From Ranitomeya imitator (Eukaryota), in NCBI RefSeq assembly GCF_032444005.1, contig NC_091289.1, forward strand, positions 121,024,001 through 121,088,000: DNA of 64,000 nucleotides, written 5' to 3'. Shown piece after piece: positions 663 to 49,764 of the stretch. The number at the start of each line of letters is the position of its first letter. The stretch's first letter is position 1. The notes below the pieces were generated by a model. The model made no database searches and was not told where the DNA came from. It was given only the letters and a program-made list of their open reading frames with translations. The position numbers and the translations under genes are program-made.

Positions 663-923
663 CTGTAAAGATATAGTCAGTGGCGTTGATTCTGTTGCTA
701 CAACTTGGCCCAAATGTTTCCACCATAACTGCATATTGCTGACCACATTTTAAGCCGTAGACTGCACAGCTGGCATCTGAAGTGTTGCATATAGTCCTCG
801 CTCCATCCTCAGTGCTGAGCGCAGCTGTGAATGTGAGTCCTCCCGCGGCTGCCTCCCAGGTGACGTCTGCATAGTCGCTGCCACATTGGTACAGCGCATG
901 GATGTTTCCTACTGCACAGGGGG
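663..923 (-). CDS. FN3 exon 14 (261 nt): APCAVGNIHALYQCGSDYADVTW...LKCGQQYAVMVETFGPSCSNRINATDYIFT
   Basis: gttttag|CCCCCTGT acceptor and ACAG|gtgatt donor. Confidence 0.92.
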
Positions 924-3900: not shown

Positions 3901-4581
3901 ATAATCAGCATTTTTGGAGCATTATACGGGGCAAATGTGTCAATGGAGCAGCTTATGGGGCCATAATCAACATTTGTGCAGCATTATATGGGGCATATTT
4001 TAATATGGAGCATCTTATGATGCCCATCATGAACTGTATGGAGCATTATATGGGGCTCCTGATTCAATATGGATATTCAAAAACACTTAACCTACTGAAT
4101 TCTCAATTAATTTTACTTTTATTGGTATCTATTTTTATTTTTGAAATTTACCAGTAGCTGCTGCATTTTCCACCCTAGGCTTATACGAGTCACAAAGTGA
4201 AAAAGCAAACAGAAAAAATAAACAGTCCATATAGTACAGCGGGTCCACCCGCTCAGGTCAGTGTCTTTAGCGCACCCACACTGAAGGTCTCCACACCTCC
4301 AGCCACAGACACTGAATGAGACATTTGGCCTCCATTGTATTATCCAAACCACTCCACTGGGGTTAGGATATGTGAGAGGTCATTTCCACCCAACTCTTAT
4401 GACCTCTCGTAAAACCCAGCCCTGGATTGGCCAAATAACTCGCTCAGCACTAATGTGCAGGAGCATACTTCCGAACTCACATCACCGCAGCTAATAGCCA
4501 CGATGACACATATCTCCATTCAATGACTCGTCCGGCAGCCATCTTACACTCTAATATACAGCATATATATGCACAAATGTG

Positions 4582-4612
<31 letters not shown>

Positions 4613-7600
4613 ATAGATAGGGGTTATTTTACAAATTTTATGTTGTGGCACTGGTGTCGCAATTCTGAATATATTTCATGGATGGATAGATTCATGCAAG
4701 TGGTAAAACAAAAATATAAAGTAAGATAACAGGAACTGAAAAAACAACATTTTAATTGTATTATGTCCTATATATATATAGCTGTATACTCTGGTTTTTT
4801 TATCTCAAATAATCCTTGACAGTACGCTGGCGTTTTTTTATTACTTGTATGCATAAAATAGCAAGTTCCTTCTAAAGGAAAAGCCCCTGAACAATGGTCA
4901 GGTCACTTCAAAGACGATCAGTAGACTGAACATGTGAACAGTAAGTTATTATTATATTGCTGTGCATATATTTACTCTTTTTAACATTTATTAATTGCTT
5001 TTTCAGGTGGGTTATGGAGCATACCCACTTGAAAAAGATGCTGTGTGCACATTCCATTAAAGGGATTTTCCGTTTTCAGAAAACCCTTGACTTCAAAACA
5101 AATGTTCACTAGTGGACATGACTTTTCTAAAATGGAAAATCCCTTTAATGCAAGAGACAAGACAAAATGTTTTTTTTACATATGAATCTAATAGAAAATG
5201 TTCCACAATATGTAGTGTTAAGATTAGAGATGAGTGAATTTGTACCCTATTTGTGCTGAATTTATGTTTGAAGATCAGGTCCGAACATATTCAGTCATTT
5301 CTACTCCCATTGACTCCAATATTGCAAATTCAATATTCACGGCCGATCGTAAACCAAACTGAATTTTCAAAATGTCAGCCAACTCTAGTTAAGGCGGTTT
5401 CACACGTCAGTGGCTCCGGTACGTGTGGTGACAGTTTCCTCACGTACCGGAGACACTGACACACGTAGACACATTAAAATCAATGTGTCTCTGCACATGT
5501 CAGTGATTTTTCGCGGACCATGTGTCCGTGTGCAAAACACGGAGACATGTCAGTGTTCGTGGGAGCGCACGGATCACACGGACCCATTAGAGTCAATGGG
5601 TCCGTGTAAACATGTACCGCACACGGATGCTGTCCAAGCGCCATCCATGTGCTGTCTGTGTGCGTTTTTCCTGTCATTGGGTTAAAATTGTAAAAGTTGT
5701 TGCAATACACGGACACACGGACAGCACACGGACAGCACACGGACCCTAAAAACGTACTCACGGACATCACTCGGATGGCCTACGTGAGCACACACACGGA
5801 CACACAGACACGGATAACTCCGGTACCATTTTCTCCGGTACCGGAATTATCTGGACGTGTGAGACTGGCCTTAGATGCTATTCTCCCCTAAAAGCACTGC
5901 AGCTATAGATGCACCAAAAAAGCACCATATGGAGTAACACAGTGCTTATAGCTTCCATTCATCAAGCCATACAAACTCTGGGAACACAGCTCATCACGCA
6001 CATGAATCAGGATTTTTGATCATTTTAGGTAACCAGGTCTGATATGAGGTGAAAACACAAGTGCATCTGTGGCTATACCCATCCTTTGCTGTTCATGTGC
6101 ACAATTCAGACTTAGAAGTAAAGCATTTGTAGAAAAACAATAATATTTCAATTTGGAAATGGAATTATAATATAAGTCTCCATTCTGAGTGCAAACCTGT
6201 ATAAAAAGGTACAGATCCACTGAAATCACTTGTACAAGTGTTTCCCACTGCCGCGACGGAGGCCTCCAACCTTAGACCACAGGAGAGTTGCGTGAAGCTG
6301 CAGGACGTGTTGCTGGACTGGCAATGGTACTGCTCTCCCTGAGGTCCAGTGGCGACTGTAGTGTAATTCACTGCTCCAACCGTCTCAGCCCAGGACACAG
6401 TTACTACATTGGACCCACAATTTATATCAGCTTGAACATGACCTGGAACACAGGGAACTGAAAGACAGAAAGTCTATTATTACAGGTTACTATGCAACAA
6501 TTCTATCTACATTGGACGTAAAATACTTCATTAGATACATCAGTTTACTACATTTGTCACCCCCTTCCCTTTGATTTTAGAAGCCAGTCAATCTAATGTG
6601 CCTTCGAAGAGCACTATTTGCAATTCCATGTTACAAGCATGTATTAGGCACAAATTCCAAGGAAGAGTACTAATGGTTAATGATAATGTCCCACTGACGG
6701 AATTATTGCCATTATAAATAGGGCCCTTCTTCTACTCCAATTAGTATTAGTATTTATTATTAATACTATATCTGTAAGGGAAGGCATGCCAGGAGATTGA
6801 TCATTTTTTTACCGCAGTCGCACAACTTTGCCCCAAAGCCAGTTTTTACCTTTCTGACGAGGCCAGTTTTCAATTCTCACCAGTCAATTTAGGCTACTAT
6901 CACACTTCCGTCGGTACGGGGCCGTCGCCATGCGTCGGCCTGACGTACCGACGGACGTTGTGAAATAAATGAACAACGGGGGCAGCGGATGCAGTTTTTC
7001 AACGCATCTGCTGCCCCATTGTAATGTCCGGGGAGGAGGGGGCGGAGTTTCGGCCGCACATGCGCGGTCGAAAATGGCGGACGCGACGCACAAAAAAAGT
7101 TACATGGAACGTTTTTTTTGTGCCGACGGTTCGCCAAAACATGACGCATCTGTCGCACGACGGATGCGACGTGTGTCCATACGTCGCAATGCGTCGCTAA
7201 TGCAAGTCTATGGAGAAAAAGCGCATCCTGCGGGCAACTTTGCAGGATGCATTTTTTCTCCAAAACGACGCATTGTGACGGACGTCACACGACGCAAGTG
7301 TGAAAGTAGCCTCATGTGGTTATAACTCTGCAATGCTTCAATGGATCTCAGTGATTCTGAGAATCTTTTTTCATTACATATTGTACTTCATGGTAACGAC
7401 AAATTTAGGATGATATTCTTTGTGTTTATTTGTGAAAATAATGGAAATTTGGTGAAAATTTAGAAAATATTGCAATTTTCAAAATGTTATTTTTATGCCC
7501 TTAAACCAAAGAGTTATGTCACACAAAATAGTTAATAAATAACATTTACCACATGCCTACTTTAAATCAGCATCATTTTTGAAGCATCATTTTTTTTATT

Positions 7601-19600: not shown

Positions 19601-22600
19601 ACATTGTTTTTTTCACATGACCGCTGCAGCTGATCAGCGGATGCTTATGAGCTGCAGCCTTAACAATTCCGCCAGCCAGAGTAAGTACAACCATATCTAG
19701 TTATTATCCTTATCTAATATTAGTATTTAATTGAATTATTTGCCACCAATATATGACATCAGAGCATCCAATATACCTGTGTACAATGCAGATGGAGAGC
19801 TGGGTGCACTCTCACACCAGTCATTGACTGCTGTCACGGTCACATCATAGGCCTGTCCACATGGAAGATCACGGATCTCACAGCCCAGCTCAGTATTATT
19901 ACATAGAAGATACTGGTTTTCTGGTGTCCTCAGCACTGAATAATAACTCTGAGCTCCGAGGGATTCATCCCAGCTCAACCTGATCACTGAGCTGGAGCAA
20001 TTTGTATCTGCAGCTAAATTGTGAGGCTGACAGGGAGCTGAAATTACACGGCAAAGGAAAGAGTCATCATTTTCATAAGTACGGAATATTCACAATGTTC
20101 AATATTGACTGTACATGTACCAAAATCTTATCATTGGTGAATGAGCACAAGCTACTTACCAGTGGTGAGGGTCACTGGGATGGCTGCAGGACCTGTGCAT
20201 TGCTGATTGATGGCGGTAACGGTCGCATGATATATCTGACCACACTGCAGCTGATTGATGATGCAGCCCATGGATGTTGTGTGGCAGGAAAGCATTTCTG
20301 CTCCCGCACTGGTCACATTGGCAACGTAACTGATGGCGCCAGGAGTCTGACTCCAAGACATTGAAGCTGAGTTGTTGTAACAGTTGAGCTGTGGTGTCTC
20401 CATGACTGTGATACAAGGAGCTGAAAAACACAATGAACCCAATTTATCATTTGCAAGAGAGTGGTGGTGGGTAGTGATGAGCGAATATACTCGTTGCTCG
20501 GGTTTTCCAGAGCACGCTCGGGTGGTCTCCGAGTATTTGTGAGTGTTCGGAGAGTTAGTTTTCCGTGCCTCAGCTGCTTGATTTACAGCTGCTAGCCAGC
20601 CTGTGTACATGTGGGGGTTGCCTGGTTGCTAGGGAATCCCTACATGTAATCAAGCTGTCTAATAGCCGCAAATCATGCAGTTGCGGCAAGGAAAACTAAA
20701 TCTCCGAGCAGTCACAAATACTCAGAGACCACCTGAGGCTGCTTGGGAAAACACGAGCAACAAGTATATTCGCTCATGACTAGTGGTGGGTTTAAGTCAC
20801 TTTTCAGTTTTTGTCTTGTGGGTATTCGTTGCTGATTTTTATGCCAAATTCTTCAAAATGGCACTAGCGATTCATGAAGTCTACGCAAAGTAGAACATTT
20901 GAAACCTTTTTTTTCTTCAAATTGTTTTTAGTACTGTTCTTTATCAAAAAGTCGCAAAATGTTGCAAAAATTAAACAAAATATTTCTGGCTTCCATAAAA
21001 TCACTGTTGGCAGACTGGAGAACATTTGTTTTTCCAACAAATTTTATTGGTTTTACAAATTTAACAAAAGTAAGGGTAAAGGGTGCGGGAAAAATAGGAT
21101 ACATGGGATAGTAGGGAAAGAAAGGGGAAAGAAAATACAGGACTTCCATACTTTAACATACTGTAGCTTACTCAAATAGAACCAGGACAACTGTCGCTTA
21201 CTCAAAAGTCAAATATGGTTCAAAAGGAAAAAATAAATACGTCCTGGGATGTCTGGAATCACCTTTAGGTGTTCCTATGACCTTGTGGGGGCAAAGTACT
21301 GTTCAAAAACAGGCTACAACTGAGGAATAAATGAAGAAAAGTATTTCTGGGCGTTCAAATAATAGAACAATTATATTCAATAAGGTGTTGTTTGTAGTAT
21401 TTCTTCATTTGGGACGAAGATCAGATTTGGACTTAGAGAGGAGTCCGTGGGAGTCCAAGGAGGATATTATACCTGCACCTATCATGAAGTCAGCTCCCTC
21501 CGCCGGAGATGAAATATCGATCAATTTGGATGCAAATTTAATTTTTAGCGTTGAGATCTGAGACCAATTGTAAGGTATTCCAGCTTTTCGGAGTTCACAG
21601 GTAGTGGACTGAAATAATTTTCGCTTTTGTAATGTTTCTTGAGATAGGTTTTTGAAAAAGACCAAGTGGTTATATGGAGAAGAAAGGAATTTCAGCTCCT
21701 TTGGTATATTTAGTAAAGCATTTGTAACCCAATTGTGGGGTAGAAGGAGACAATGACATCTGTTTCGACATCAGATGGAAGAGCAGATGGTCTGCGTACT
21801 CTAAAGACCTTTTCAAGTACATTTTCCTCTTTGGCTTTAGGAAGTAGATAAGAAATTAATGAAGAGTTGTAATCTTTTAGTTGGGAGTTCTTTGGAATCC
21901 CTCTAATTTTTACATTGTTTTTCTTTTAAAAGTCTTCAAGATTGTTTAGATTTTTTCTAAAAGAATTGATATCATTTTGGATATTTTTCAATGAATCAGA
22001 GAGTGTAGCAAGATTTTGCTGCTCGGTAGGGTATGAGGACCTTTGATTTTTGACTGAAGAGATTTTTTTTGAGTTATAGAAGGAGTTATCAGAAACTCCA
22101 TAAGAATTTGAGTGTGTGTTAACAGCAATGTATGATAACTTATCTTCAAAGAGCTCTTTAATGAAACTCTTGGACGCTTTGGTATTGTTTAAGTGTATAG
22201 AGTCTTCAGGTCTTCCAAATTGGTTTCAGATATTTTTGAATCATCATCACTTGTAGTATTTTTCACTGAAACTAGGAGGGCTTTACATATGCTAATCATA
22301 AATTTTTCTGTTGGATTATCATCTGTTGCTTGGATATCGTTTATCAATGAGTTGTTGTTGTTAGAGTGCCCTTGTATTTTTTTCTGATTTGGTTTGATTT
22401 GGTTTAGTTCTTTGCTTAAATTTTTCATAAAAGTCAGAGTTTTCACTACTAGATTTGTGTTCTGAGGAAGAATATGACTCTGAAGAATAGATGTCATCAA
22501 GGGCCATATCATCTGAAAAAAAGTCACGTCTATAATCAGATGAATCTATATCGCTATAAAACTCCCCAAAATGACCATTTTCCATCTCTCCTGATGAGTT

Positions 22601-37600: not shown

Positions 37601-40600
37601 CCATATGGTACGAACCGCCCTGAACGCAGGTTAAGCGACAGGCAAGGGTCAGAGACATCGATGCCCAATGCTGTATCAGTGTGTTCCCTGGATGACAAGT
37701 TGCTGAGTAAAGATGTTGAAGTGAAACTGGACTGTGACTCCTTATTCTTAGAATTGTCTGCAAAGGTACTGACCCGTACCGGGGAAGCCCTGATGGCGTA
37801 GAGAAGCAGCACCGAGGTACTCAGAATGGAAGACGTGTCTGTATGCAGGAGGAGGCCCAGGGAGTGATACAGGGATTGCTGTCGGCCATGGCTACCTCCC
37901 TGGTTCCCTCTTCCTACGCAGCCATTACAACATCTTATGGTATGATAATTAAGATGTCTGGTCTGGCATCTGATAATTTAGGTACCTGGTTTTGGGTCTG
38001 ATAATTCTAAGGTAACATAACATCCTAAACCTATAGAGGTGGCCATACACCTTAAATAGTTCTTTCACCTTACAGCTATTCCTCCTGATTCCCATCTCTG
38101 CATCACACATACCTGTATTCTCAATGGTAAAGGGTAGTAGGCTGCTTACAGTCATTTCTAGTGGCTAATCTCCATTAAAAGCAACACAATTGATCTTGAT
38201 GAATTCTAACAAGCCCCCAAACTGCTGTTGGGGACAAAAGGGATACTCCCATACCAGGTGTGAACACAGACAGAAGAGGGCCCCTGCGGAAGAAGAAGAA
38301 TATATGGGCTCTTTGCAGTATAATAGCTCCTGAAAACGCACAATTACACCTGATTTTGAGATGGCAGTGGCCCCCTTACCTCATGACCTCCTGTCCTCCT
38401 GAGCCCCTGTACATACACATTAGATGGTTGACCACTCGCCCAATGTGTATGGCTACACTTGGCAGCTTAGTTGTAATTTTCAAAACCATAGTTATGGGGA
38501 TAATGGGCACATTCAAATATTTACAATGGGGCCCGGCCTTTTCTAGTTACACCCCTGCTTAGCACAGTTGTGTGCATGAGGCTTTAGAAAAGGGGACTTG
38601 TCATGCTACAAATCATTTCTAAAATCATTTTAAAAAATGTAGAAAAAAATTAACTTTACCTGAAAGTAATGGTGCACTCTGATTGGAGGAAGAGACACAC
38701 TGACCATTATTGGCATCAACAGAAACAGAGAACGGTTGTCCACAGCTAATATTGCTGATTTCGCATTGATTCTCTAGCGTTGTACAGTTGTGATGTTCAG
38801 AGTCGCCCCATGCAGTAGCTGTGAATGTTAGATTTCCGGTGTCCTCCATCCACGTGACAAGTATTGTGTTTTCATAGCAAATTAATTCAGTAGTGACAAT
38901 CTGTGGGATACAGGGAACTGCAAAGACAAAAAAAACCCAAACATTTTATTTTGCTTCGTAACTGGAAGTAAGAAACTGTTCAAGTGATAGGATGGAATGA
39001 GAAGGCTGCTGTAGATCAGCAGTCAGTGATTGTCTGCAGTGGTCATGTGATGCCCCCCCCTCCCCCCACTAGAGGTTGCCTCTAGTAGACAAGCAGTGAA
39101 CATAGTAGTGAGTGTGGAGGAATCACCTAGCAGGTAAGTATAGTTTTTTTTTTCCTTAAAACACCCTGGGCGCATTAAGTATAACCCGTTTAATTTTTAA
39201 CTTTCTTATTGTGCCATTACATTGTGCATATAAAAAATTGGAGGTGTTTCATCTGAGAAAAAAAGGCTTTTTAATGTTTCTATAAAAAGAACACAAAAGG
39301 AACATGTCACGTTTAGTGTTGATCGAATAGTGAAATATTCGGATTCAGGAAAATCGGCACAAATAATTTCTAATATCCGTGTATCCGTACCGAATAACTA
39401 ATCTAATGCAAGTCAGTGGGAAAGACGAATATATTTCTTTAGACCCAACAATCGTGTCTGGGAGCCTGAGAAAAAAGCTTAAATGGATGGGACAGAGCTA
39501 AAACTAAATGGGGACAGCATTGAGAAGATGCCTGCATGCCTTTCTGACTCACATATGGTATCTGGGAATAATTTTGTCAGACTATTGCGTCGGTTTTACA
39601 GGTTTTTAAAAAGACCCACCAAACCAAACATTTTTTTAAAAAGGGAAAAATGCTAAGAAACATTATTTCTTTCATAATTGCATATTACATGTATATAATG
39701 AAAAAAAAAAAATAAAAATAAATTATACCTCCCCTTTAGCAGAGTGCCAGCAGGTGCTGTGAAACCTGAGTTTGGTAAGGGCCCTCAGTTGACCCTGTAT
39801 CATACATTTGGTAGAGCTTTCGGGAAGTCCCTCTCTCATGCCAAATAGATAGCCAGACAGTGGAATACATATTCCCCATCACTTTGCAATGCCAGCTAAG
39901 ACATGCCCATTTGAATTTTGGGCTTTGCCCGCCACCACCACCATATCCACTGCCTTATGCGACCCTCGCTGACAATTAGCAGAGTGCCTGTAGATGCCGT
40001 GAAACCTGCATTTTGTAAGGTCCACAGGTCATTTTTGCCACCGGATCCCAATGGAGCCACTGTCATAGCAGGTGAAGCCTCGGTAAGGTGAATATAATAC
40101 AGGAGTGGATTCTACCAAACACCAAAAGCATTAAAATTAAATTCTGAATACAGTGTATGCAAGCGAGGGCCTATATTGTGGTCAGTTTGTCAGGCCTGAA
40201 ATCCATGTCAGGAACATGTATTAGCCTCATTTTACTTGAAAGCAGCCTCCTCAAGGGAAAGAGCCAGGAGTGCCATTGACCAATCTGCACAAGCCTACGC
40301 ACTTCTTCTGGAAACTACCTAACCAGGCTGAATTTATCTTTTGCATGGTTTTAAGCAACAATGGAATAACTACAGGATATGTCACAGAGAGTGATGAGGT
40401 CTGTGGCGTGTATTACTCAGGTGACAAGCAGTGCTACACAGCTGAGGTAAAGGCCGTAGCGTGGCAATAACCATGTTCAAATATGTGTAAGGCTGCAGCC
40501 TGAATAGGTCTGTGGAGTGTATTAACCCAGTCTCTTAGACGTGCTTAAAATGTACAGAAACTGGCCAATAACCCACCAACATTTTTTTGTAAGGACCCAA

Positions 40601-43600: not shown

Positions 43601-46600
43601 CCAGCTCCTCCGGTTCTATAACATCCTGCCTGCAGGTCAGATACCATGTTCGTTATGACATAAATTGACTAAGTTTTTTTTTCTAAGAAAAACTCCTGCA
43701 TTCATCTTAATTGTTCGATTTGCATATCCTAGTTAACGCGCTGTTTCATAAAGACGATCCCTACCTCAATTATGGCATAAAATATCCAAAGTGAGGGAAC
43801 CCCCATCTATAAGACAGGATGGGTGCTGGTAACAAAGAGCAGCTGTCATGCAGGCAGATATGGTAAATCCTGTCACAGTTTGACCAGAGGGATAACAACT
43901 GTTTATGGTGGGTTTCTGGAGGTGGACTCATCGCCAGGCAAAGAAATTTTAATAAATGAGTGACTAATCAAGACTACAAGTTAGGCCTCGTCCAGACGTC
44001 AGCAATTTTTCTTGTCCGTAAACATAAAAACAGTCTGACTTTCATATGCGGTTTTGATTTTTTGATCCGATTTTCATCAGTGTGTTTCTCTCATAAAAAA
44101 AATAAGCAAATAAATTGTGAAGCTTCTCCTACCCATTACAGCGATAAAAACGGAAAGCACACGGACTGCACACAAATGACAGAGATTACTGTCTGTCAGC
44201 CATTTCTTAAGGACTCACGGATTTGTATTGGCAATTTTGACACTCAGATAACAAAACAACTGCAGACATGTGGACATCTGCATAGAATATAATAAGCACA
44301 TGTTATATCCATGAAAGAGATGGATAGAATATGTACGGGAAAACCAGACGTCTGAACGAGGCCTTATCCAGACTCCCCTTTAACTTGTTTATATTTGTAA
44401 TACTTACAACGGTTGTCAGCAATGAACGCTCACCTGCTTTGACCTCCACAGTCGGCCTGTAGGGGCTCATGCACTGGAAGTTGTCGGCAATCACATATAC
44501 TGTATAGGTCTGGCTGCACGCCAATGCAGATAAATTACAGCTTTGATCAAAGGATTCACAGGAATATTCTGAGCCATCACTTGCTTTCGCATACGCAATG
44601 TAACGAACGGCCCCTTCACTGTACTCCCATTGAACGAGCGTAGATTGGGTTTGGCAATCAGTCAGGGCTGAAATTTTCTCTGGTGCACAGGGAACTGTAA
44701 GGCAAACACGCAAGAATGATGTTGTCCATGATACTCCATTTTTTAGGACTTGGTTGACTTAAATTGTCCTCACTATAAAATATATATTGAAGAGATACAT
44801 CATATAAGGAATAGGTGTCAGGTCTACAGCCAGGAGGTGACACTACATTGTTGCCATCTGCTGAACCTGAGTATGAGTTGCCGGCATAGATATTTCCCAC
44901 CCTTGTTTCCTGAATGGCTCTCCTTACCAGAATTAGGCTGGTTTCACACACACAGGGTTTTATTGAAAAATACCACTGCGGTTATTTATATAGTTTTTTT
45001 GAGTCAAAGACCGGAATAGATCCGGTAAGGAGAAGCATAAGGCTGTGCGTACCCAATGTGTTTTTTTCCGTGATTTTCTAAACTAAAGCAGTACATTTTT
45101 TTGCGTTTTTAACCACATTTCCAGAAAATAGTAGCAAAAACTGAAAAAGGCATTACACACTCATGGGTTTTTTTTCTTTATTGAATCCATTTCTGTTTTA
45201 GGCCCAAAAATGCATGAAAAACTGCCACAATTTTTTTTTTATTTTCCAGAGACATGAACCTTTTCATTTGGTGCTAATTTTTATGGTCTTTTCCAAGGGA
45301 GTGTAGCTCACAGGGTAATGCAGACAATCCTAAAGACATGCCCCCTTGTAAAGACCAGAAAAACAGCACTAAATAAAAAAGGACCATATCTCTGGAACCG
45401 TATGGTTTATTTTAATAATAAAAAAAAACCCACAGAATAATTAGGGGAGAAGTGGGAATAAAATAAGAGTAAAAAAAAAATCTGTATTTTGACCTCGTGG
45501 AAGGTTTACTATAAACCCCCAGAAGTAGAAAAAAATAAAGTGCGAGCACTTACAGCACCTGTAATTTGTGAATCAGAAGAAGGAAAGTGCTGACGGCCAT
45601 CTCCTCCCTTTTCTCTATTGACACAATACAGGCACTGGAGATTGAGCCAAGGTTTCCAACCTTTCCGAAATTTGATGTATCTTTAATTTTTTTTTAGTCA
45701 GAGGAGTTTATACAGATTATTAGGATTGGAGTTATCATCATTCAGTGGAGTACCACGAATACTGGCATGCCACACGACTGCTATACGGCCTGTAAGTTTG
45801 AGCTCAGAGTCTCAGCAGAGTGGGCACATTGACTTCACTACATCAGATGAGTAGTTTTCTCTTTTTTTAATGATTAGAATGGGGCTATTATGTTGTGTTT
45901 AGTCTACATACTGTTGGACCAACACACTGTGTGTAAGGGGATATGGGACCATCATAAAGCGTGGGGAGCTTTGGGGGCATTAGCTCTATGTAGGGGGACT
46001 ATCGGGATGACCAAACTGTGTGTGGGGTTGTATGGGGGCATTATACTGTTTGGAGGCCTGTATGGAGGCCATTATATTATGTGGGAACCTATGTTACTGG
46101 GTGGAGGGTTGTGTGGGGACCATTACATTGTGTGGAGGGCTATGTGGGGCAATTATACTGTGTGGAGGGCTGTATGGACGCACCCTATACTACATAGATG
46201 ACAATGTTAGGGTTGTTATACATTGAGGAGGACTATCATCCTGTGTTGTGGGACTGTGGGCACCTCATAATGTGTGTGGGGGAGCTGAGGGACATCTGTG
46301 TTTGGATCACTATGGGAGCATCATACTGTGTTGGGCTCATTGTGAGATAATCTTAATGTGCATGTGGAGAGTACTGTGGAGGAATTCACTATGTGGGTAT
46401 CATACCGTGTTTAGAAGGCATTTTTGTTGGTATAATACTTTATGGGGGCATGAAAAGGTTATCACAGTGGGTGAAAATACTAAGGGGCTTCAACAGGGTA
46501 AAAATCATGAGTACGACTGCCTAGTGCAGTCGAAACACATCGACTGGGTCATGTAGACCATGTAAATTTTTCTTTTGTATGCACTATATTTTCTTTTGAA

Positions 46601-49600
46601 AAATAAAATGAAAAGGAAAATCCAGTCCTGTTTAGACGGACTCCAATTTTTTCTATTTTCCTTGATGTGAGGCCAGGGCAAGGCCGATGTCTGAGCCCCA
46701 GGTGGATGAGCATAGAGCAACTGGGTGAGCTGGAATCAAGTTTTTATAAGGGTAAAAAAATCACTTTGCAAGTACCGCCATACATGTCTCTCTGTCTTTA
46801 AAGTTGTCAGATACACCTACTGTGACTGTGCTTATGCAGCATGTGCAACATGATCCTGTCGCTAAATATTTTTTCTTTTCTTTGAAGAGTGGGGTGTGGT
46901 GGTGGGGTTAGGGAATTAGGACTTCTTTTCTGCCATCAGGCCCCATGATTCATATGTATGCCTCTATCATCATTATATAATTACCAGTGAAATTTCAAGT
47001 TTACACCAGTGCTATGAGCTTTATCTATATGACTCTTCATCTTCGTCATTTATTATCTCATTTTAGGATTAAATGTCCAGAAAAAAAAGGAGACCGCTCT
47101 GGATAGGGTCCATATTCTGTTGATATTGTTAAAAAGTGCAAAATCGAGAACCTACACTTCTTTCAGCTGCTCACCCTACAACTCACTTAACTCAAAGAAG
47201 AGATAGGGGAATAGGGTTACATTATTTTTTTTATTTTGCTTACTTATAATTACTATACATATACCCTTATTACTTTTCTGAGTATTTGCCACTTTTCTAT
47301 GCAGGCATATTAACTGGTTTAGTTCATGTGAGCATCTCCCAATATCTATTTTTTTGTCTGAATCCACCAAATTCTTTCGGCTTTGGCCAATATTGAAATA
47401 CCTGTCACTACCGCCTCCGGAGCACTACTCATACTGTGGCAATCTTCATCATAGGCAATCACTGTCACGGACAGACTTTCTCCACATTGTAGCCCTTTGA
47501 TCTGACAGCTGGTATTAACTGAGGAACAGTTGTAGGAAATGTCACTGCTTCCTAAGGCTGATGCTGTATAGAAGTCTGCCCCAAGCGATGGTCTCCATGA
47601 CACCTCCACCGTATTGTCTGAGCACTGAGCAATGGCCACAACATTCTGCGGGTCACAAGGCGCTGAATTGTAAAGAGATAAATAATGTGTGAGTGTGAAC
47701 CATGCAAAGGTAATATTATACATATCGTCTACATCAGGGGTGTCAAACTGCATTCCTTGAGGGCTGCAAACAGGTCATGTTTTCAGGATTTCCTTGTACT
47801 GCACAGGTGATAATTTAATCACCACCTCATTTGTGTAGGTGATTAAATTATCACCCGTGCAGTACAAGGAAATCCTGAAAGCATGACCTGTTTGCAGCCC
47901 TCGAGGAATGCAGTTTGACATCCCTGGTCTACATTATAAGTGGACTGAAGAGTTCTGAGGCCCTTCTACTCACCTGTCCTTACTTTAATCCCTTGGCTCT
48001 TAGAACCATTAACTTTGCCATTGAAAGCAAATACACTCAGTTCGTACTCTGTCCCGCACAGCAGGTTCATGAAGAAGCAGTTGTTATCCCTGTTCACACA
48101 TTCTTCCTTGCTGCCATCTGGAGCCAAGGCATTTGCGGTGTACCTATTGGCATTAATTACAGGATTCCAGTAAAGGCTGACAGTGTTAATCTGGCAATCA
48201 CGGATTACTGTCACATTCTGTGGAGCACACGGAGCTATAAATTAAAAAAAAATCTCCAGTTACACATAGAGTAGTATCTAACAAGAGCTCAACTCTTTAT
48301 ATAAGAAATCTATATAGATCAGGGGGTTTACTGATATTACGGGAAATAACAATCTGCAAATTTTTGTTTAATTCTTTAATGTCATCATTCATTTACATAT
48401 CAGTAACATGTCTATCCATCGTGTGATTTCCACAATTTCTTGGCTTTTCCTTCTTGGTACTGGAATTTCATTGTTGACGAATGTGCAACAAAAAATATAG
48501 AGGTAATGTCCCCTTTAGATAGGTTGATCCTGGCCATTAAACGAGCTCCAATCAGCAAAATGCAAGCTAATCAATGCTCATTTACTGGCCAATGAGTCAA
48601 TGTGCACCGAATAATCTATGATAGTTTGTCTGATTGACTAAATACTACTTTTTGCTGTAAAGTGCTGTAAACATCTTCTAACATTTTAGCTTATATATGA
48701 CGTATGCCACTGTATGGCATCTGTCGAAAGTGTATGTTGAAAAATATTCCTGATAAAGACCTCTGGTTAAAACCTGAGATGCAGTCTGCACAAAGTTTAA
48801 AGCCCTCATTCATCTTAAATTGCTGTCAGCTGAAACATCATCTGGCCGACAACTATCTCACCTAACTCTCCCATACACAGGAATGGTTGCTCTGCCGAGC
48901 GCTCTTGTGTTCTCTATGACAGTTCTGGGGTCCTGGGTTCAAATCCCACCAAGGACTATATCTGCAAGAGTTTGTATGTTCTCCCCGTGTTTGCGTGGGT
49001 TTCCTCCTGGTTCTCTGGTTTCCTCCCACATTCCAAAGACATACTGATAGGGAATTTAGATTGTGAGCCCCATCGGGGACAGCGATGATAATGTGTGCAA
49101 ATTGTAAAGCGCTGCGGAATATGTTAGCGCTATATAAAAATAAAGATTATAATTACGGTATTATTATTATATGGCAGAGAATTGTATCGGGGGGAACAAA
49201 AGGATTGACAGTCGAAAGAAGGCATGCCTCTTGTGTACAAATTTCTCAACGCCATGTCTGCCATGTGCTGTGCCCATCCTTACATTAGATGCAGTACCTG
49301 ACACCCATGGATCATTCCTTTGCAAGTTTATAAAGGTATTGGCATCCCAAGGACACAAATACAACCGAAAGTCAAAACTGAAGCCCAAGATCCCAAAACA
49401 CCAGGCAAAAGTCTCAAGTAACATGCCCCCGCTGCTAAATACATTATAATATATTAATAAATTCCAGATTTCATGCAATCAACATCTCCGATAGTGAAAT
49501 TACCTGTTTCCAGAGTCAACGTTTCACTGCTATTGCTGATGCAGCCATTAATGAGAGCTATGATGCTCACGTTATATGTCTGTTCACACTGCAGGTTCTG

Positions 49601-49764
49601 GATGACACAACTGCTAGAATTAGATGTGCATAATGTCTCTTGTCCAAGAGTGGATTTTGCAGACGCCAGATATGAAGTAGCTCCAATACTTAATTTCCAG
49701 GATAATAAAGCACTCCCCAGATTGCTGTTATACTGAATGGTGACATCTTGAGGAGAATCCAGCC
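663..49764 (-). CDS. Partial multi-exon gene: long FNDC7-family protein with at least 14 tandem Cys-rich FN3 domains; 5' and 3' ends lie outside the window
   Basis: 14 exons of 255-267 nt, each flanked by canonical AG/GT, all phase 1-1 and stop-free, so they splice into one frame. Each shows the FN3 pattern (A/V)PCxP..V..W....GA..Y......C......C....L.CG..Y.V.V.A. Many N-x-S/T sequons suggest an extracellular protein. Family assignment is from recalled similarity to the Cys-rich FN3 repeats of FNDC7; orthology is not established. Confidence 0.9.
1821..2156. mobile_element. Fully palindromic TTAA-flanked MITE (T2/Kolobok-like, AGGG termini)
   Basis: TTAA|AGGGAC...GTTCCCT|TTAA; the arms are complementary along nearly their whole length, centre about 1990. 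Confidence 0.9.
2339..2684 (-). mobile_element. Tc1 deletion derivative
   Basis: 24-bp TIRs CAGCTCT(A/G)GCAAAAATTAAGAGAC with TA flanks. The internal minus strand encodes WAAQSPDLNPIENLWNVIKR, the Tc1 catalytic-Glu motif. A related fragment lies at about 1540-1720. Confidence 0.9.
2710..4195. mobile_element. Non-autonomous TcMar (Tc2/pogo-like, CCGTA terminus) element with internal minisatellite; right end truncated
   Basis: TA|CCGTATATACTCGAGTATAAG left TIR; internal segments shared with 9690-11265. Confidence 0.65.
3375..3900. repeat. 39-bp minisatellite, about 13 copies
   Basis: Unit ggggccatgtgcagcattatatggggcaaatatctctat and variants; it produces the spurious 13-aa-periodic ORFs in the track. 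Confidence 0.93.
4587..4612. repeat. (TA)n microsatellite
   Basis: Direct reading. Confidence 0.9.
5057..5148. mobile_element. Very short (~90 bp) TTAA-flanked T2-like MITE
   Basis: TTAA|AGGGATTTTCC...GGAAAATCCCT|TTAA. Confidence 0.7.
5393..5870. mobile_element. Harbinger-type MITE
   Basis: GGCGGTTTCACACGTC / GACGTGTGAGACTGGCC termini with TAA/TTA flanks. Confidence 0.75.
6197..6457 (-). CDS. FN3 exon 13 (261 nt): VPCVPGHVQADINCGSNVVTVSW...LSCGLRLEASVAAVGNTCTSDFSGSVPFYT
   Basis: ctttcag|TTCCCTGT acceptor and ACAG|gtttgc donor. Confidence 0.91.
6892..7311. mobile_element. Harbinger-type MITE; an oppositely oriented relative lies at ~28535-28948
   Basis: GGCTACTATCACACTT / AAGTGTGAAAGTAGCC termini; internal blocks match 28540-28948 in reverse complement. 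Confidence 0.78.
7370..9690. mobile_element. Internal fragments of the same large piggyBac-like non-autonomous repeat family
   Basis: Recurring blocks (gtcaccattttggaaagtag, gagtacgctgatacccc, aatgttattttagcccc) also seen in 14800-15900; termini not identified. Confidence 0.55.
9690..11265. mobile_element. Second copy of the Tc2-like element (right TIR ...ATACTCGAGTATATACGG|TA) carrying the CR1 insertion
   Basis: Shares the gaagacacagcggc...gagaggtgagtat and caatatggatattcaaaaacacttaacctactg blocks with 2710-4195. Confidence 0.7.
10111..11053 (+). mobile_element. 5'-truncated CR1 LINE (ORF2 C-terminus and 3' UTR)
   Basis: LQDDLCKLEAWADKWQMSFNGDKCKVMHLG...EKDLGV...LERVQRRATK...LGLFSLEK*RLRGD; ends in an ACTATGTAACTAT-type tail. 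Confidence 0.92.
11601..11805. mobile_element. Tc1/mariner-type MITE
   Basis: Perfect 29-bp TIRs CAGGGTGGGCCATTTATATGGATACACCT; TA on the right flank. Confidence 0.82.
13176..13921 (-). mobile_element. Solo LTR of a sushi-type Gypsy element
   Basis: TGTCATGA...CCACAACA termini similar to the LTRs at 54274 and 59300. Flanked by the direct repeat GATGTG (13170-13175 and 13922-13927), or 4-bp GATG if the LTR starts 2 nt earlier. Confidence 0.85.
13956..16006. mobile_element. Non-autonomous piggyBac-like element
   Basis: TTAA|CCCCTTT...AAAGGG|TTAA; no transposase; shares internal blocks with 7370-9690 and 17480-18637. Confidence 0.7.
16410..17356. mobile_element. Solo LTR-like element related to the one at 35852
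   Basis: TGTAGGGG...GCCACA termini and similar AT-rich-then-purine-rich layout; no clear TSD. Confidence 0.45.
17480..18641. mobile_element. Fragment of the piggyBac-like family ending in AAGGGG|TTAA
   Basis: Right terminus at 18632-18641; internal similarity to 7370-7800 and 15450-15800. Confidence 0.55.
18063..18224. mobile_element. hAT MITE (palindromic, CAGGGG termini)
   Basis: Perfect 8-bp TSD CTTTACAG (18055-18062, 18225-18232). Confidence 0.93.
18914..19085. repeat. Degenerate ~32-bp minisatellite, about 5 copies
   Basis: ccctgggcta....gcagccagccacacacca-type units. Confidence 0.7.
19777..20037 (-). CDS. FN3 exon 12 (261 nt): APCQPHNLAADTNCSSSVIRLSW...LPCGQAYDVTVTAVNDWCESAPSSPSALYT
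   Basis: atttcag|CTCCCTGT acceptor and ACAG|gtatat donor; 122-nt intron to exon 11. Confidence 0.93.
20160..20420 (-). CDS. FN3 exon 11 (261 nt): APCITVMETPQLNCYNNSASMSW...LQCGQIYHATVTAINQQCTGPAAIPVTLTT
   Basis: ttttcag|CTCCTTGT acceptor and ACTG|gtaagt donor. Confidence 0.93.
20472..20782. mobile_element. hAT MITE (TAGTGATGAGCGAATATAC TIRs)
   Basis: 8-bp TSD GTGGTGGG (20464-20471, 20783-20790); same TIR class as the 39314-43358 element. Confidence 0.9.
21030..22760 (-). pseudogene. Degenerate L1 ORF1 with a nearby polyA-like 3' end; no ORF2
   Basis: Manual translation gives NLEDF*KKNNVKIRGIPK...LEKVFRVRRPSALPSDVETDVIVSFY...FKNLSQETLQKRK...LRKAGIPYNW, matching L1 ORF1p RRM/CTD motifs. AATAAAATTTGTTGGAAAAACAAA lies about 350 bp downstream. 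Confidence 0.65.
22804..23064 (-). CDS. FN3 exon 10 (261 nt): APCTPQNVTANVDCVTNMATIGW...LMCGQKYLVTVSAASKGSSSNASQPIDLHT
   Basis: tcttcag|CTCCTTGT acceptor and ACAG|gtaagg donor. Confidence 0.93.
23236..23496 (-). mobile_element. V-SINE-type tRNA-derived SINE
   Basis: A box TGGCTCAGTGG, degenerate B box, V-domain TGTTTGCGTGGGTTTCCTC...GGTTTCCTCCCAC and AT-rich tail. Confidence 0.8.
23725..23979 (-). CDS. FN3 exon 9 (255 nt): APCTPTNLISLAGAEVVDVSW...LMCGSQYSVTVTANGAYCSSNSSHTHSFQT
   Basis: cccccag|CACCCTGC acceptor and ACAG|gtgagg donor. Confidence 0.93.
24115..24375 (-). CDS. FN3 exon 8 (261 nt): APCSPQNVTAEVDCVTNIVAVSW...LSCGQKSVITVSAANNYSDSKASSAIELLT
   Basis: tctacag|CACCATGT acceptor and ACTG|gtgagt donor. 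Confidence 0.93.
24530..24962. repeat. Two tandem copies of a 208-bp unit
   Basis: ctcctgtcca recurs at 24536, 24744 and 24952; the copies differ by scattered substitutions. Confidence 0.9.
25363..25617 (-). CDS. FN3 exon 7 (255 nt): VPCTPSNLESQVGAEVVNISW...LMCGSQYSMAVTAYGQYCNSNRSYTKTFQT
   Basis: ttttcag|TGCCCTGT acceptor and ACAG|gtcaga donor. Confidence 0.92.
25893..26296. mobile_element. Palindromic PIF/Harbinger-type MITE
   Basis: About 60-bp TIRs GGTACC(A/G)TCTCACAGTGGCACTTTGGTCGCTACGACGGCACGATCCGTGACG; TAA/TAA 3-bp flanks. Confidence 0.85.
26701..26871. mobile_element. Right half only of the same MITE family as 1821-2156
   Basis: Matches about 1990-2156 (ttgccttg...caggtgacaggttccctttaa). 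Confidence 0.85.
27517..27783 (-). CDS. FN3 exon 6 (267 nt): APCKPTDVSAKSMCANGTTQILW...TECGEVYHATVTAVGSSCQTLSSAFSVEP
   Basis: tttacag|CGCCTTGC acceptor and CCAG|gtacca donor. Confidence 0.9.
28535..28948. mobile_element. Harbinger-type MITE, same family as 6892-7311, left TIR eroded
   Basis: Right end GTGTGAAAGTAGCC|TTA. Confidence 0.72.
29211..29688. mobile_element. T2-like palindromic MITE
   Basis: (G)TAA|AGGGAATCTGTCAC...TTACCT|TTTAA with imperfectly complementary arms. Confidence 0.65.
30693..31294 (-). CDS. SGNH/GDSL-type hydrolase ORF of the Ngaro element; no ATG, preceded by a splice acceptor
   Basis: Motif blocks IFGHSY (I), LGFRG (II), LHVGGKDL (III; usually GGND) and DGVHL (V). 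Acceptor tttttgtttttcag|GTCGCC at 31295/31294; stop at 30693-30695. Confidence 0.85.
31358..32293 (-). CDS. Tyrosine recombinase of the Ngaro element (open 311-aa ORF)
   Basis: Catalytic set present: FRVGE (R), SKSD (K), HSFR (HxxR), GRW (W), SYVRP (Y). Confidence 0.92.
   Translation of the reverse strand: MPCGTLASGIRDAEALIKASLAPRTWEAYQAIWRKWEDLFLAAHSGSSQEDQVGVLLPWLSRGASVGWSSSKVSRVLAALAFGFKLRGLCDITKSFLVQRAVKGFRRRPEKKDSRRPVSFKVLEKLGEVLSSLCFSVLELCLFRLAFSLAFFGAFRVGELVSPSTQVSGGILARDVFLSDGHVELWLRRSKSDQEGRGSRILLGSVDGSAMCPVACLRWYWGLQPRRDRSLLCHQDGSCLSHYQFTAVFKREIALLGLDGACFAPHSFRIGAATEAALGGLGAPAIRRIGRWRSSRFRSYVRPQGMVGGDL
32245..34104 (-). pseudogene. Ngaro reverse transcriptase + RNase H with a premature stop near 32653
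   Basis: VSPLGVVPKKE..KFRLIQHLS, KTDIESAFRLLP, LPMG and HYLDDFL motifs. RNase H reads FTDAAGGSGFGAYFQGQ*, then LEIFPILVA..CDN..NSIADSLSR. The in-frame TGA sits where Trp is expected. Confidence 0.88.
33803..35655 (-). CDS. Ngaro ORF1 (gag-like), frameshifted in this copy
   Basis: GC-rich low-complexity N-terminus (ORF 34792..35655). It is followed in another frame by a conserved region (YVCFEGPLGAHL, NWLQAFAILASV, WLRYDEQFRQRKA) and a zinc finger CWQFNEGQCKFGVNCKFKHLCSHC. Confidence 0.7.
35852..37929. mobile_element. Solo LTR-like element (TGTAGGGG...CCATTACA) containing a nested LTR at ~36478-37507
   Basis: TG...CA ends; the 3' end ccatggctacc.ccc resembles that of the LTR at 49890-52036. 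The inner LTR ends GGGGTGCCACA and is flanked by TTTG/TTTG if it starts at 36478. No TSD for the outer element. Confidence 0.55.
38660..38917 (-). CDS. FN3 exon 5 (258 nt): VPCIPQIVTTELICYENTILVTWMEDTGN...ISCGQPFSVSVDANNGQCVSSSNQSAPLLS
   Basis: tttgcag|TTCCCTGT acceptor and TCAG|gtaaag donor. Confidence 0.92.
39314..43358 (-). mobile_element. hAT DNA transposon deletion derivative (~4.0 kb) with BED zinc-finger remnant
   Basis: TIRs TAGTGTTGATCGAATA / TATTCGCTCATCACTA and perfect 8-bp TSD GTCACGTT (39306-39313, 43359-43366). Minus-strand SPVWQFF...VICSIC...TTSMQKHMAAKH is a BED finger. No recognisable DDE core. Confidence 0.88.
40891..41196 (-). repeat. Two near-identical in-frame 153-bp copies, each encoding a BED zinc-finger core
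   Basis: Unit starts recur at 40891, 41044 and 41197. The unit encodes TVICSICQTKLRRGKDTANLSTTSMQKHMAAKHLSRWAEHLGTKSVSEGET (51 aa). Confidence 0.92.
43984..44363. mobile_element. Harbinger-type MITE
   Basis: GGCCTCGTCCAGACGTC / GACGTCTGAACGAGGCC termini with TTA/TTA TSD. Confidence 0.82.
44434..44694 (-). CDS. FN3 exon 4 (261 nt): VPCAPEKISALTDCQTQSTLVQW...LACSQTYTVYVIADNFQCMSPYRPTVEVKA
   Basis: ttacag|TTCCCTGT acceptor and GCAG|gtgagc donor. Confidence 0.93.
47402..47662 (-). CDS. FN3 exon 3 (261 nt): APCDPQNVVAIAQCSDNTVEVSW...LQCGESLSVTVIAYDEDCHSMSSAPEAVVT
   Basis: aattcag|CGCCTTGT acceptor and ACAG|gtattt donor; within ORF 47346..47753. Confidence 0.93.
47735..47926. mobile_element. hAT MITE related to 18063-18224, inside the short intron between exons 2 and 3
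   Basis: Perfect 8-bp TSD GTCTACAT (47727-47734, 47927-47934); palindromic. Confidence 0.93.
47974..48234 (-). CDS. FN3 exon 2 (261 nt): APCAPQNVTVIRDCQINTVSLYW...LLCGTEYELSVFAFNGKVNGSKSQGIKVRT
   Basis: ttatag|CTCCGTGT acceptor and ACAG|gtgagt donor; overlaps ORF 47966..48214. Confidence 0.93.
48925..49155 (+). mobile_element. 5'-truncated V-SINE-type SINE
   Basis: B box GGTTCAAATCC, same V-domain, 3' AAAAATAAAGATTAT tail. Confidence 0.8.
49504..49764 (-). CDS. FN3 exon 1 in window (261 nt): LDSPQDVTIQYNSNLGSALLSWKLSIGATSYL...CTSNSSSCVIQNLQCEQTYNVSIIALINGCISNSSETLTLET
   Basis: Acceptor ttaccag|GGCTGGAT and donor ACAG|gtaatt; open frame. Not in the supplied ORF track; translated manually. 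Confidence 0.88.

What the first reader, a model, noticed from the sequence alone, without database searches (positions are those of the whole stretch)
663..49764. Cysteine co-variation between adjacent FN3 domains implies a disulfide-stapled rod with three looser joints
Seen in sequence: each exon can carry six Cys (N-terminal PC, AB loop, strand C', strand E, EF loop LxCG, FG loop). The AB Cys is absent only in exons 1, 7 and 9; the FG Cys is absent only in exons 2, 8 and 10. So AB-Cys(n) and FG-Cys(n+1) are both present at 10 junctions and both absent at 3, with no discordant junction (13/13). Within one domain they do not track each other: exon 7 has FG but not AB, exon 8 the reverse. Established knowledge: in the FN3 fold the AB and EF loops lie at the C-terminal pole, and the N-terminus and FG loop lie at the opposite pole. 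Inference: AB(n)-FG(n+1) and EF(n)-PC(n+1) are two inter-domain disulfides and C'-E is intradomain, giving a covalently stapled, stiff extracellular rod with single-stapled joints at 1/2, 7/8 and 9/10. I do not know of this pairing being described for the FNDC7 family; I could not search the literature.
Basis: partly seen in the sequence, partly recalled or inferred. Interest (0 to 1): 0.8.

Follow-up and report, generated by a model that had tools for sequence, protein, structure and literature searches.

The report
Disulfide-braced FN3 array in frog gene
Fourteen exons of a frog FNDC7-like gene each encode one cysteine-rich FN3 domain, and family-wide co-variation indicates that neighbouring domains are joined by a disulfide between loops, a bracing I found described in no paper.

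Summary
The minus strand carries 14 phase-1 exons (663-49764), each encoding one FN3 domain. The AB-loop Cys is missing only in exons 1, 7 and 9. The FG-loop Cys is missing only in exons 2, 8 and 10.

The 13/13 count overstates independence. Exons 7-8 and 9-10 are a tandem duplicate, so the window holds two independent events.

The inference holds far beyond the window.
- Across 1289 junctions between Cys-rich domains in 150 family representatives, AB(n) and FG(n+1) agree in 1270 (phi 0.87). Within one domain phi is 0.28.
- An unbiased scan of all column pairs ranks C'-E, AB(n)-FG(n+1) and EF(n)-PC(n+1) highest.
- In 24 tree-independent contrasts, FG(n+1) followed AB(n) about 17 times and never opposed it.

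AlphaFold2 models of four-domain segments are very confident (pLDDT 97, pTM 0.82).

The "looser joints" idea got no support: a segment with only single-stapled joints scored pTM 0.79.

Exon 1 is not the first FN3 domain of the protein. Its unpaired FG Cys probably pairs with a lone EF-loop Cys encoded upstream of the window.

Literature searches found no description of this pairing. The scan had not noted it on other DNA.

The parts
49504..49764 (-). Exon 1: FN3 domain with the C', E, EF and FG cysteines, lacking PC and AB. It is the first Cys-rich domain and the fourth FN3 domain in orthologues.
47974..48234 (-). Exon 2: FN3 domain lacking the FG Cys
47402..47662 (-). Exon 3: FN3 domain with all six cysteines
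44434..44694 (-). Exon 4: FN3 domain with all six cysteines
38660..38917 (-). Exon 5: FN3 domain with all six cysteines
27517..27783 (-). Exon 6: FN3 domain with all six cysteines
25363..25617 (-). Exon 7: FN3 domain lacking the AB Cys through a 2-residue deletion in the AB loop
24115..24375 (-). Exon 8: FN3 domain lacking the FG Cys
23725..23979 (-). Exon 9: duplicate of exon 7 (66% amino-acid identity), lacking the AB Cys
22804..23064 (-). Exon 10: duplicate of exon 8 (63% amino-acid identity), lacking the FG Cys
20160..20420 (-). Exon 11: FN3 domain with all six cysteines
19777..20037 (-). Exon 12: FN3 domain with all six cysteines
6197..6457 (-). Exon 13: FN3 domain with all six cysteines
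663..923 (-). Exon 14: FN3 domain with all six cysteines. The gene continues beyond the window start.

Best explanation
The window holds 14 consecutive exons of a very large secreted 'FNDC7-like' protein of a dendrobatid frog. Each exon encodes one roughly 87-residue FN3 domain.

Each repeat contributes to three disulfides.
- C'-E lies inside the domain.
- The EF-loop Cys of domain n pairs with the 'PC' Cys in the short linker before domain n+1.
- The AB-turn Cys of domain n pairs with the FG-loop Cys of domain n+1, across the domain interface.

The AB-FG bond is the dispensable one. It is lost as a pair at junctions 1/2, 7/8 and 9/10, and the last of these is a copy of 7/8. The result is a covalently cross-braced, extended array.

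Shown: the cysteine pattern, its family-wide co-variation, the fold and the extended arrangement. Inferred: that the co-varying cysteines are bonded in cis, and that the bonds stiffen the array.
For: Gene and family.
- 11 of 14 exons match Pfam fn3.
- The nearest named proteins are 'FNDC7-like'. P0063 of Dendrobates tinctorius is about 90% identical to exons 9-13.

Concordance and parity.
- 1289 junctions between Cys-rich domains were examined in 150 representatives. AB(n) and FG(n+1) are both present in 1202, both absent in 68 and discordant in 19 (phi 0.87). Same-domain AB x FG gives phi 0.28, and C' x E gives phi 0.84.
- The interface set AB(n)+EF(n)+PC(n+1)+FG(n+1) has an even count at 1803 of 1852 junctions.
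- Of 100 interfaces with exactly two cysteines, 83 are EF+PC and 5 are AB+FG.
- Domain types 001100 (392 domains) and 110011 (81 domains) show that C'-E behaves as a separate pair.

Unbiased and tree-corrected tests.
- Mutual information with average-product correction over all 174x174 column pairs ranks C'-E, AB(n)-FG(n+1) (0.290) and EF(n)-PC(n+1) (0.241) at the top.
- There are 24 independent contrasts that differ in AB(n). FG(n+1) changes the same way in about 17, the opposite way in 0 and is unchanged in about 7 (p about 1.5e-5). The same-domain control gives p about 0.25.

Patterns along whole proteins.
- P0011 has a run of six junctions without AB-FG. The run starts with an AB-less domain and ends with an FG-less domain, as the offset rule predicts.
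- The arrays close correctly. The last domain keeps only the PC and C'/E cysteines. In the penultimate domain a BC-loop Cys replaces the FG Cys.
- Where both cysteines are lost, they are often replaced by aromatic or aliphatic pairs. The AB loop is shortened in 27 of 68 such junctions, against 4 of 1212 where AB is present.

Structure and cellular context.
- The AlphaFold2 four-domain model has pLDDT 97.2 and pTM 0.82. It resembles extended fibronectin fragments.
- The 14 exons hold 34 N-glycosylation sequons. Orthologues show no transmembrane-like segment.
Against:
- There is no biochemical evidence for any of the bonds.
- About 1-2% of junctions are discordant. One case is an unpaired AB Cys conserved in sharks and rays. 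Some others may come from skipped exons in gene models.
- The FG Cys of exon 1 has no AB partner. It needs a variant EF(0)-FG(1) bond, and its proposed partner lies outside the window.
- AlphaFold2 is nearly as confident for a segment with no AB-FG pairs (pTM 0.79). Stiffness may therefore not depend on that bond.
- No RNA evidence for the exons could be obtained.
Confidence: 0.78

Rival explanations
1. All disulfides lie within one domain: PC-FG at the N-terminal pole and AB-EF at the C-terminal pole, plus C'-E.
For: Each proposed pair lies at one pole of the same FN3 domain, so the geometry is possible from the known FN3 topology. Eight two-cysteine interfaces carry PC+FG only.
Against: Exons 2, 7, 8, 9 and 10 would each hold an unpaired Cys, because each has 5 cysteines. 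Same-domain PC x FG and AB x EF show no association among Cys-rich domains (phi -0.02 and 0.04). The per-domain count of these four cysteines is odd in 212 of 2328 domains, while the interface count is odd in only 49 of 1852 junctions.
Confidence: 0.04
2. The interface cysteines pair the other way round: AB(n)-PC(n+1) and EF(n)-FG(n+1).
For: All four cysteines lie at the same interface. The junction before exon 1 in orthologues carries only an EF-loop Cys and an FG Cys, which shows that this pairing is feasible. Four two-cysteine interfaces are EF+FG.
Against: AB and FG are lost together and leave EF+PC behind in 83 of 100 two-cysteine interfaces. The strongest inter-domain couplings are AB-FG and EF-PC, not the crossed pairs.
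Confidence: 0.05
3. AB(n) and FG(n+1) do pair, but between two parallel, in-register chains. This would make covalent dimers or fibres rather than an internally braced monomer.
For: Sequence co-variation cannot tell cis from trans. A conserved unpaired AB Cys in shark and ray proteins hints that some cysteines may act between chains.
Against: A monomer model is very confident about the relative placement of the domains (pTM 0.82). The cis partners lie at the same interface by FN3 topology. A trans bond at dozens of junctions would require exact register along the whole array.
Confidence: 0.07
4. The co-variation is an effect of shared ancestry or chance, with no physical link between the two cysteines.
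For: Within the window there are only two independent events. Arrays grow by duplicating multi-exon units, which copies patterns.
Against: Tree-based independent contrasts give about 17 co-changes and none opposed, and the same-domain control is null. Thirty different representative proteins carry junctions that lack both cysteines.
Confidence: 0.02

Closest known systems
Vertebrate 'fibronectin type III domain-containing protein 7-like' proteins (fish, amphibians, sharks and rays)
   Same: They share the six-cysteine FN3 repeat, the one-domain-per-exon arrays and the AB/FG offset rule. P0063 (Dendrobates tinctorius) is about 90% identical to exons 9-13. P0007, P0011 and P0023 are colinear with the window's exons.
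   Different: The window carries an extra copy of the exon 7-8 unit. None of these proteins has a described function or disulfide map in the literature searched.
FNDC7 proper (for example fish P0179-P0185)
   Same: These are arrays of Cys-containing FN3 domains that begin with Cys-poor FN3 domains. They have the PC, C', E and EF cysteines.
   Different: They have only about 8 domains and mostly lack the AB and FG cysteines at these positions. Extra cysteines occur elsewhere (PCC, HCRCG, strand B), so the disulfide scheme is not the same.
Fibronectin FN3 tandems (PDB 1fnf, 3t1w, 6xay)
   Same: Same fold and the same extended head-to-tail arrangement. They are the best Foldseek matches, with TM about 0.45-0.5 over 3-4 domains, and the best PDB sequence matches.
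   Different: Those matches are generic, and no solved chain of the six-cysteine type was found. Fibronectin FN3 domains are, from general knowledge, free of disulfides and joined by non-covalent, flexible interfaces.
Calcium-stiffened cbEGF rods of fibrillin (a functional analogy recalled from memory, not tested here)
   Same: Long arrays of small extracellular domains are made rod-like by a constraint placed at every domain interface.
   Different: The fold is different. The constraint there is a bound Ca2+ ion, not a covalent bond between neighbouring domains.

Membership tests
Fibronectin type III domain (Pfam PF00041) | Match to the fn3 profile | tested here: met
   11 of 14 exons match at E<0.01, with a best E-value of 1.2e-8. 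P0063 scores 3.1e-38.
Fibronectin type III domain (Pfam PF00041) | Seven-stranded beta sandwich (A, B, C, C', E, F, G) | tested here: met
   The AlphaFold2 model of orthologous domains 1-4 shows seven strands per repeat at pLDDT 97. It matches fibronectin fragments.
FNDC7-like six-cysteine FN3 arrays | Repeat signature PC.P ... C ... W ... C ... C ... L.CG..Y.V.V.A ... C, with one domain per phase-1 exon | tested here: met
   In the profile search, 533 representatives score E<1e-30. The nearest hits are named FNDC7-like.
FNDC7 proper (orthologue of human FNDC7) | About 8-9 FN3 domains with the FNDC7 cysteine pattern | tested here: not met
   Fish FNDC7 proteins have a different cysteine pattern and are short. 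Orthologue-like proteins of the window gene have 20-41 detected repeats.
Inter-domain disulfide AB(n)-FG(n+1) | The two cysteines are gained and lost together | tested here: met
   phi 0.87 over 1289 junctions. About 17 of 24 independent contrasts go the same way and none the opposite way.
Inter-domain disulfide AB(n)-FG(n+1) | The sulfur atoms lie within bonding distance in a structure | not testable with these tools
   The models are returned without coordinates. No solved structure of this repeat type exists.
Inter-domain disulfide AB(n)-FG(n+1) | The protein passes through the oxidising secretory pathway | tested here: inconclusive
   The window exons hold 34 N-x-S/T sequons. Orthologues show no transmembrane-like segment. 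P0011 has a hydrophobic N-terminal stretch. No signal-peptide predictor was run, and the N-terminus lies outside the window.

The most novel reading that the evidence does not exclude
FNDC7-like proteins form a previously undescribed class of covalently cross-braced beta-sandwich rods. A loop-to-loop disulfide, AB(n)-FG(n+1), recurs at nearly every one of up to about 55 FN3 interfaces. The few evolutionarily conserved junctions that lack it (1/2 and 7/8 in frogs) act as built-in mechanical hinges in a secreted filament 100-200 nm long.
Probability: 0.25. Interest if true: 0.8.

Novelty: new variant of a known kind. Interest (0 to 1): 0.6.

Why it matters
From general knowledge, FN3 arrays are usually elastic, disulfide-free strings of domains. 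A periodic covalent bond between neighbouring FN3 domains would give a different mechanical element: a rod that can neither bend freely nor unfold domain by domain.

Such a bond would also set rules for expressing and engineering multi-domain FN3 constructs. It would give a first structural handle on a large vertebrate protein family that has not been studied and has no known function.

The offset rule is also a practical annotation check. A junction that breaks it flags a skipped or misplaced exon in a gene model.

Tried and rejected
- **Neighbouring exons.** I searched the window for the upstream Cys-poor exon with the lone EF Cys and for a fifteenth exon below position 663. Neither is present. 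Positions 49.8-64 kb are filled with retroelements.
- **Solved structures.** A PDB sequence search found only generic FN3 hits and no six-cysteine type.
- **Literature.** Searches on FNDC7, FNDC7 plus disulfide, and FN3 plus inter-domain disulfide found nothing relevant.
- **Joint looseness.** I used pTM as a proxy and compared two models. The values were 0.82 and 0.79, which does not discriminate. The shared alignment is dominated by double-stapled paralogues.
- **FNDC7 proper as a replicate.** Rejected, because its cysteine positions differ and my scoring windows mis-score them.

Full report
**What is in the window**

A six-frame scan with a profile built from the obvious exons finds 14 FN3-coding exons, all on the minus strand, and nothing else above noise. 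Each exon is bounded by AG and GT and is in phase 1-1.

The split codon is G|CN or G|TN. The mature junction therefore reads ...T-[A/V]-P-C-x-P..., and the genomic "TG" at exon ends is not part of the protein.

Eleven of the 14 exons match Pfam fn3. The introns are full of retroelements.

**The observation**

In the alignment of the 14 exons (A1) the C', E and EF cysteines are invariant.
- The PC Cys is missing only in exon 1.
- The AB Cys is missing only in exons 1, 7 and 9. In exons 7 and 9 it is removed by a 2-residue deletion.
- The FG Cys is missing only in exons 2, 8 and 10.

Its weight is less than 13/13 suggests. Exons 7 and 9 are 66% identical and exons 8 and 10 are 63% identical, while other exon pairs are 20-45% identical. 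The DNA of the two units aligns through the exons but not the introns. Exons 9-10 are therefore an old tandem copy of exons 7-8. The window holds two independent co-losses, and the chance of exact coincidence is about 1/55 rather than 1/286.

**Bringing in the family**

A profile search with A1 against 1.84 billion representative proteins gave 533 hits below 1e-30. The top hits have up to 57 repeats.

The closest named protein is P0063, an "FNDC7-like" protein of Dendrobates tinctorius. It is about 90% identical to exons 9-13, so the window comes from a dendrobatid frog.

I located 2328 domains in the 150 best proteins. Each was scored for the six cysteines in windows anchored on the conserved Trp and on the F-strand Ala.

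The commonest domain types are listed below. Digits give presence (1) or absence (0) in the order PC, AB, C', E, EF, FG.
- 111111: 1155 domains
- 001100: 392 domains
- 000000: 332 domains
- 110011: 81 domains
- 111110: 59 domains
- 101111: 51 domains

The 001100 and 110011 types show that C'-E behaves as a unit of its own.

**Cross-junction co-variation**

| Comparison | Set examined | Result |
|---|---|---|
| AB(n) x FG(n+1) | 1289 junctions between Cys-rich domains | both present 1202, both absent 68, discordant 19; phi 0.87 |
| AB(n) x FG(n), same domain | Cys-rich domains | phi 0.28 |
| C' x E, same domain | Cys-rich domains | phi 0.84 |
| EF(n) x PC(n+1) | all 1852 junctions | both present 1327, both absent 502, discordant 23; phi 0.97 |

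A parity test makes the same point without assuming which cysteines pair.
- The four cysteines facing one interface, AB(n), EF(n), PC(n+1) and FG(n+1), sum to an even number at 1803 of 1852 junctions.
- The same four positions counted within one domain give an odd number in 212 of 2328 domains.
- Of the 100 interfaces with exactly two cysteines, 83 are EF+PC, 5 are AB+FG, 8 are PC+FG and 4 are EF+FG.

**Two controls against bias**

The first control used no prior choice of columns. I computed corrected mutual information over all 174x174 column pairs of 1442 aligned two-domain units. The top couplings were C'-E (in each domain), AB(n)-FG(n+1) at 0.290 and EF(n)-PC(n+1) at 0.241. These are exactly the three proposed bonds.

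The second control addresses shared ancestry, because arrays grow by duplication. I built a tree of the 1289 two-domain units with the AB and FG columns removed and used independent contrasts. Of 24 contrasts that differ in AB(n), FG(n+1) changed the same way in about 17, the opposite way in none and was unchanged in about 7 (p about 1.5e-5). The same-domain control, FG(n), gave 3-4 same-way changes (p about 0.25).

**Patterns along whole proteins**

P0007 and P0023 are colinear with the window. They show the same 001111, 111110 start and the same 101111, 111110 pair at positions 7/8, so these two single-stapled junctions are old.

P0011 has a run of six junctions without AB-FG. The run opens with a domain that lacks only AB and closes with a domain that lacks only FG, which is the offset the model predicts.

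The arrays also terminate cleanly. In the conserved penultimate domain a BC-loop Cys, at the same pole as the FG loop, replaces the FG Cys. This accounts for 11 of the 23 apparent "AB present, FG absent" cases. The last domain keeps only the PC and C'/E cysteines.

Where both cysteines are lost, they are often replaced by aromatic or aliphatic residues. The AB loop is shortened in 27 of 68 such junctions, against 4 of 1212 where AB is present.

Real exceptions exist. One is an unpaired AB Cys conserved in sharks and rays.

**Correction about exon 1**

In P0007, P0011, P0023 and P0086 the exon-1-like domain is preceded by three Cys-poor FN3 domains. The third of these carries a single Cys in its EF loop (L-x-P-C-T-K/I-Y).

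Exon 1 lacks PC but keeps FG. Its otherwise unpaired FG Cys therefore most likely pairs with that upstream EF Cys, in a variant junction.

That upstream exon is not in the window, and neither is a fifteenth exon.

**Structure**

I modelled P0007:339-690, the orthologue of exons 1-4, with AlphaFold2 and a 97-row alignment of paralogous four-domain windows. The model has pLDDT 97.2 and pTM 0.82, with no dip at the linkers.

DSSP on the model places the cysteines as follows.
- PC: in coil, 4 residues after strand G and 6 residues before strand A.
- AB: immediately after strand A.
- C' and E: inside their strands.
- EF and FG: in their loops.

Foldseek matches extended fibronectin fragments. No solved structure of this repeat type exists.

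By the standard FN3 topology, the AB and EF loops lie at the C-terminal pole, and the N-terminus, BC loop and FG loop lie at the other pole. The proposed partners therefore face the same interface.

This remains the main gap.

**The "looser joints"**

A four-domain segment of P0011 in which all three junctions lack AB-FG gave pLDDT 96.8 and pTM 0.79. AlphaFold2 therefore does not see these joints as less defined. The comparison is weak, because pTM does not measure flexibility and the shared alignment is dominated by double-stapled rows.

EF-PC staples the linker to domain n rather than joining two domain bodies. It is therefore reasonable, but unproven, that junctions without AB-FG are more mobile.

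**What the protein is**

Orthologue-like proteins have this layout:
- a hydrophobic N-terminal stretch;
- three Cys-poor FN3 domains;
- a long run of Cys-rich FN3 domains (P0007 has 41 repeats in 4119 residues);
- two special terminal FN3 domains;
- no transmembrane-like segment.

The window's 1214 residues hold 77 cysteines and 34 N-glycosylation sequons. This fits a large secreted glycoprotein. Its function is unknown.

**Comparison with what is known, and novelty**

The gene belongs to the annotated "FNDC7-like" family. FNDC7 proper has a different cysteine pattern.

Searches of about 8.4 million papers found nothing on FNDC7 disulfides or on inter-domain disulfides in FN3 arrays. The scan's own notes hold nothing similar.

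I rate this a new variant of a known kind: a known fold and family with an undescribed, periodic inter-domain bracing. The sequence evidence for it is strong, but there is no direct structural or chemical proof yet.

Noticed in passing
window 30300-35700 (minus strand, intron between exons 5 and 6): A retroelement with several long ORFs. One is reverse-transcriptase-like (32653-34104). One looks like a tyrosine recombinase (31358-32293). One is gag-like with a zinc-knuckle region (33803-34888). This layout resembles DIRS/Ngaro elements. The reading rests on ORF translations only.
   Followed up: no
window 55200-59250 (minus) and 60130-63500 (plus): Two related Ty3/gypsy-like retrotransposon copies with long gag-pol ORFs (732 and 960 residues), in opposite orientation. 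They fill the DNA upstream of exon 1.
   Followed up: no
window 3200-4160, with a shorter related stretch at 9880-10150: Minisatellite-like tandem repeats give long ORFs in several frames (repeated GKYLYGAMCSIIW-type units).
   Followed up: no
window 50300-51330: Low-complexity repeats give overlapping ORFs rich in Leu, Cys, Ser and Pro on the minus strand. This lies next to the element that another note describes as an LTR element.
   Followed up: no
orthologues P0001, P0007, P0011, P0023, P0086, P0120 (outside the window): The third Cys-poor FN3 domain carries one conserved Cys in its EF loop (L-x-P-C-[TS]-x-Y). The first Cys-rich domain lacks PC but keeps FG. This implies a variant EF(0)-FG(1) bond at the start of the array.
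   Followed up: partly
shark and ray proteins P0042, P0055, P0154, P0158 and others: A conserved three-cysteine domain (PC, AB, EF) follows a six-cysteine domain. This leaves one AB Cys with no partner at the interface. It may be a free thiol or an inter-chain bond.
   Followed up: partly
C-terminal ends of P0001, P0007, P0009, P0011, P0012, P0030, P0042: A conserved two-domain end module. In the penultimate FN3 domain a BC-loop Cys (W+5) stands in for the FG Cys. The last FN3 domain has only the PC and C'/E cysteines, so the disulfide pattern closes with even parity.
   Followed up: partly
P0007 C-terminus (last ~240 residues): The gene model runs from the last FN3 domain into sequence that resembles retroelement reverse transcriptase (WRRYIDDVLCVW...). 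This is probably a mis-annotation that fuses a transposon to the gene.
   Followed up: no
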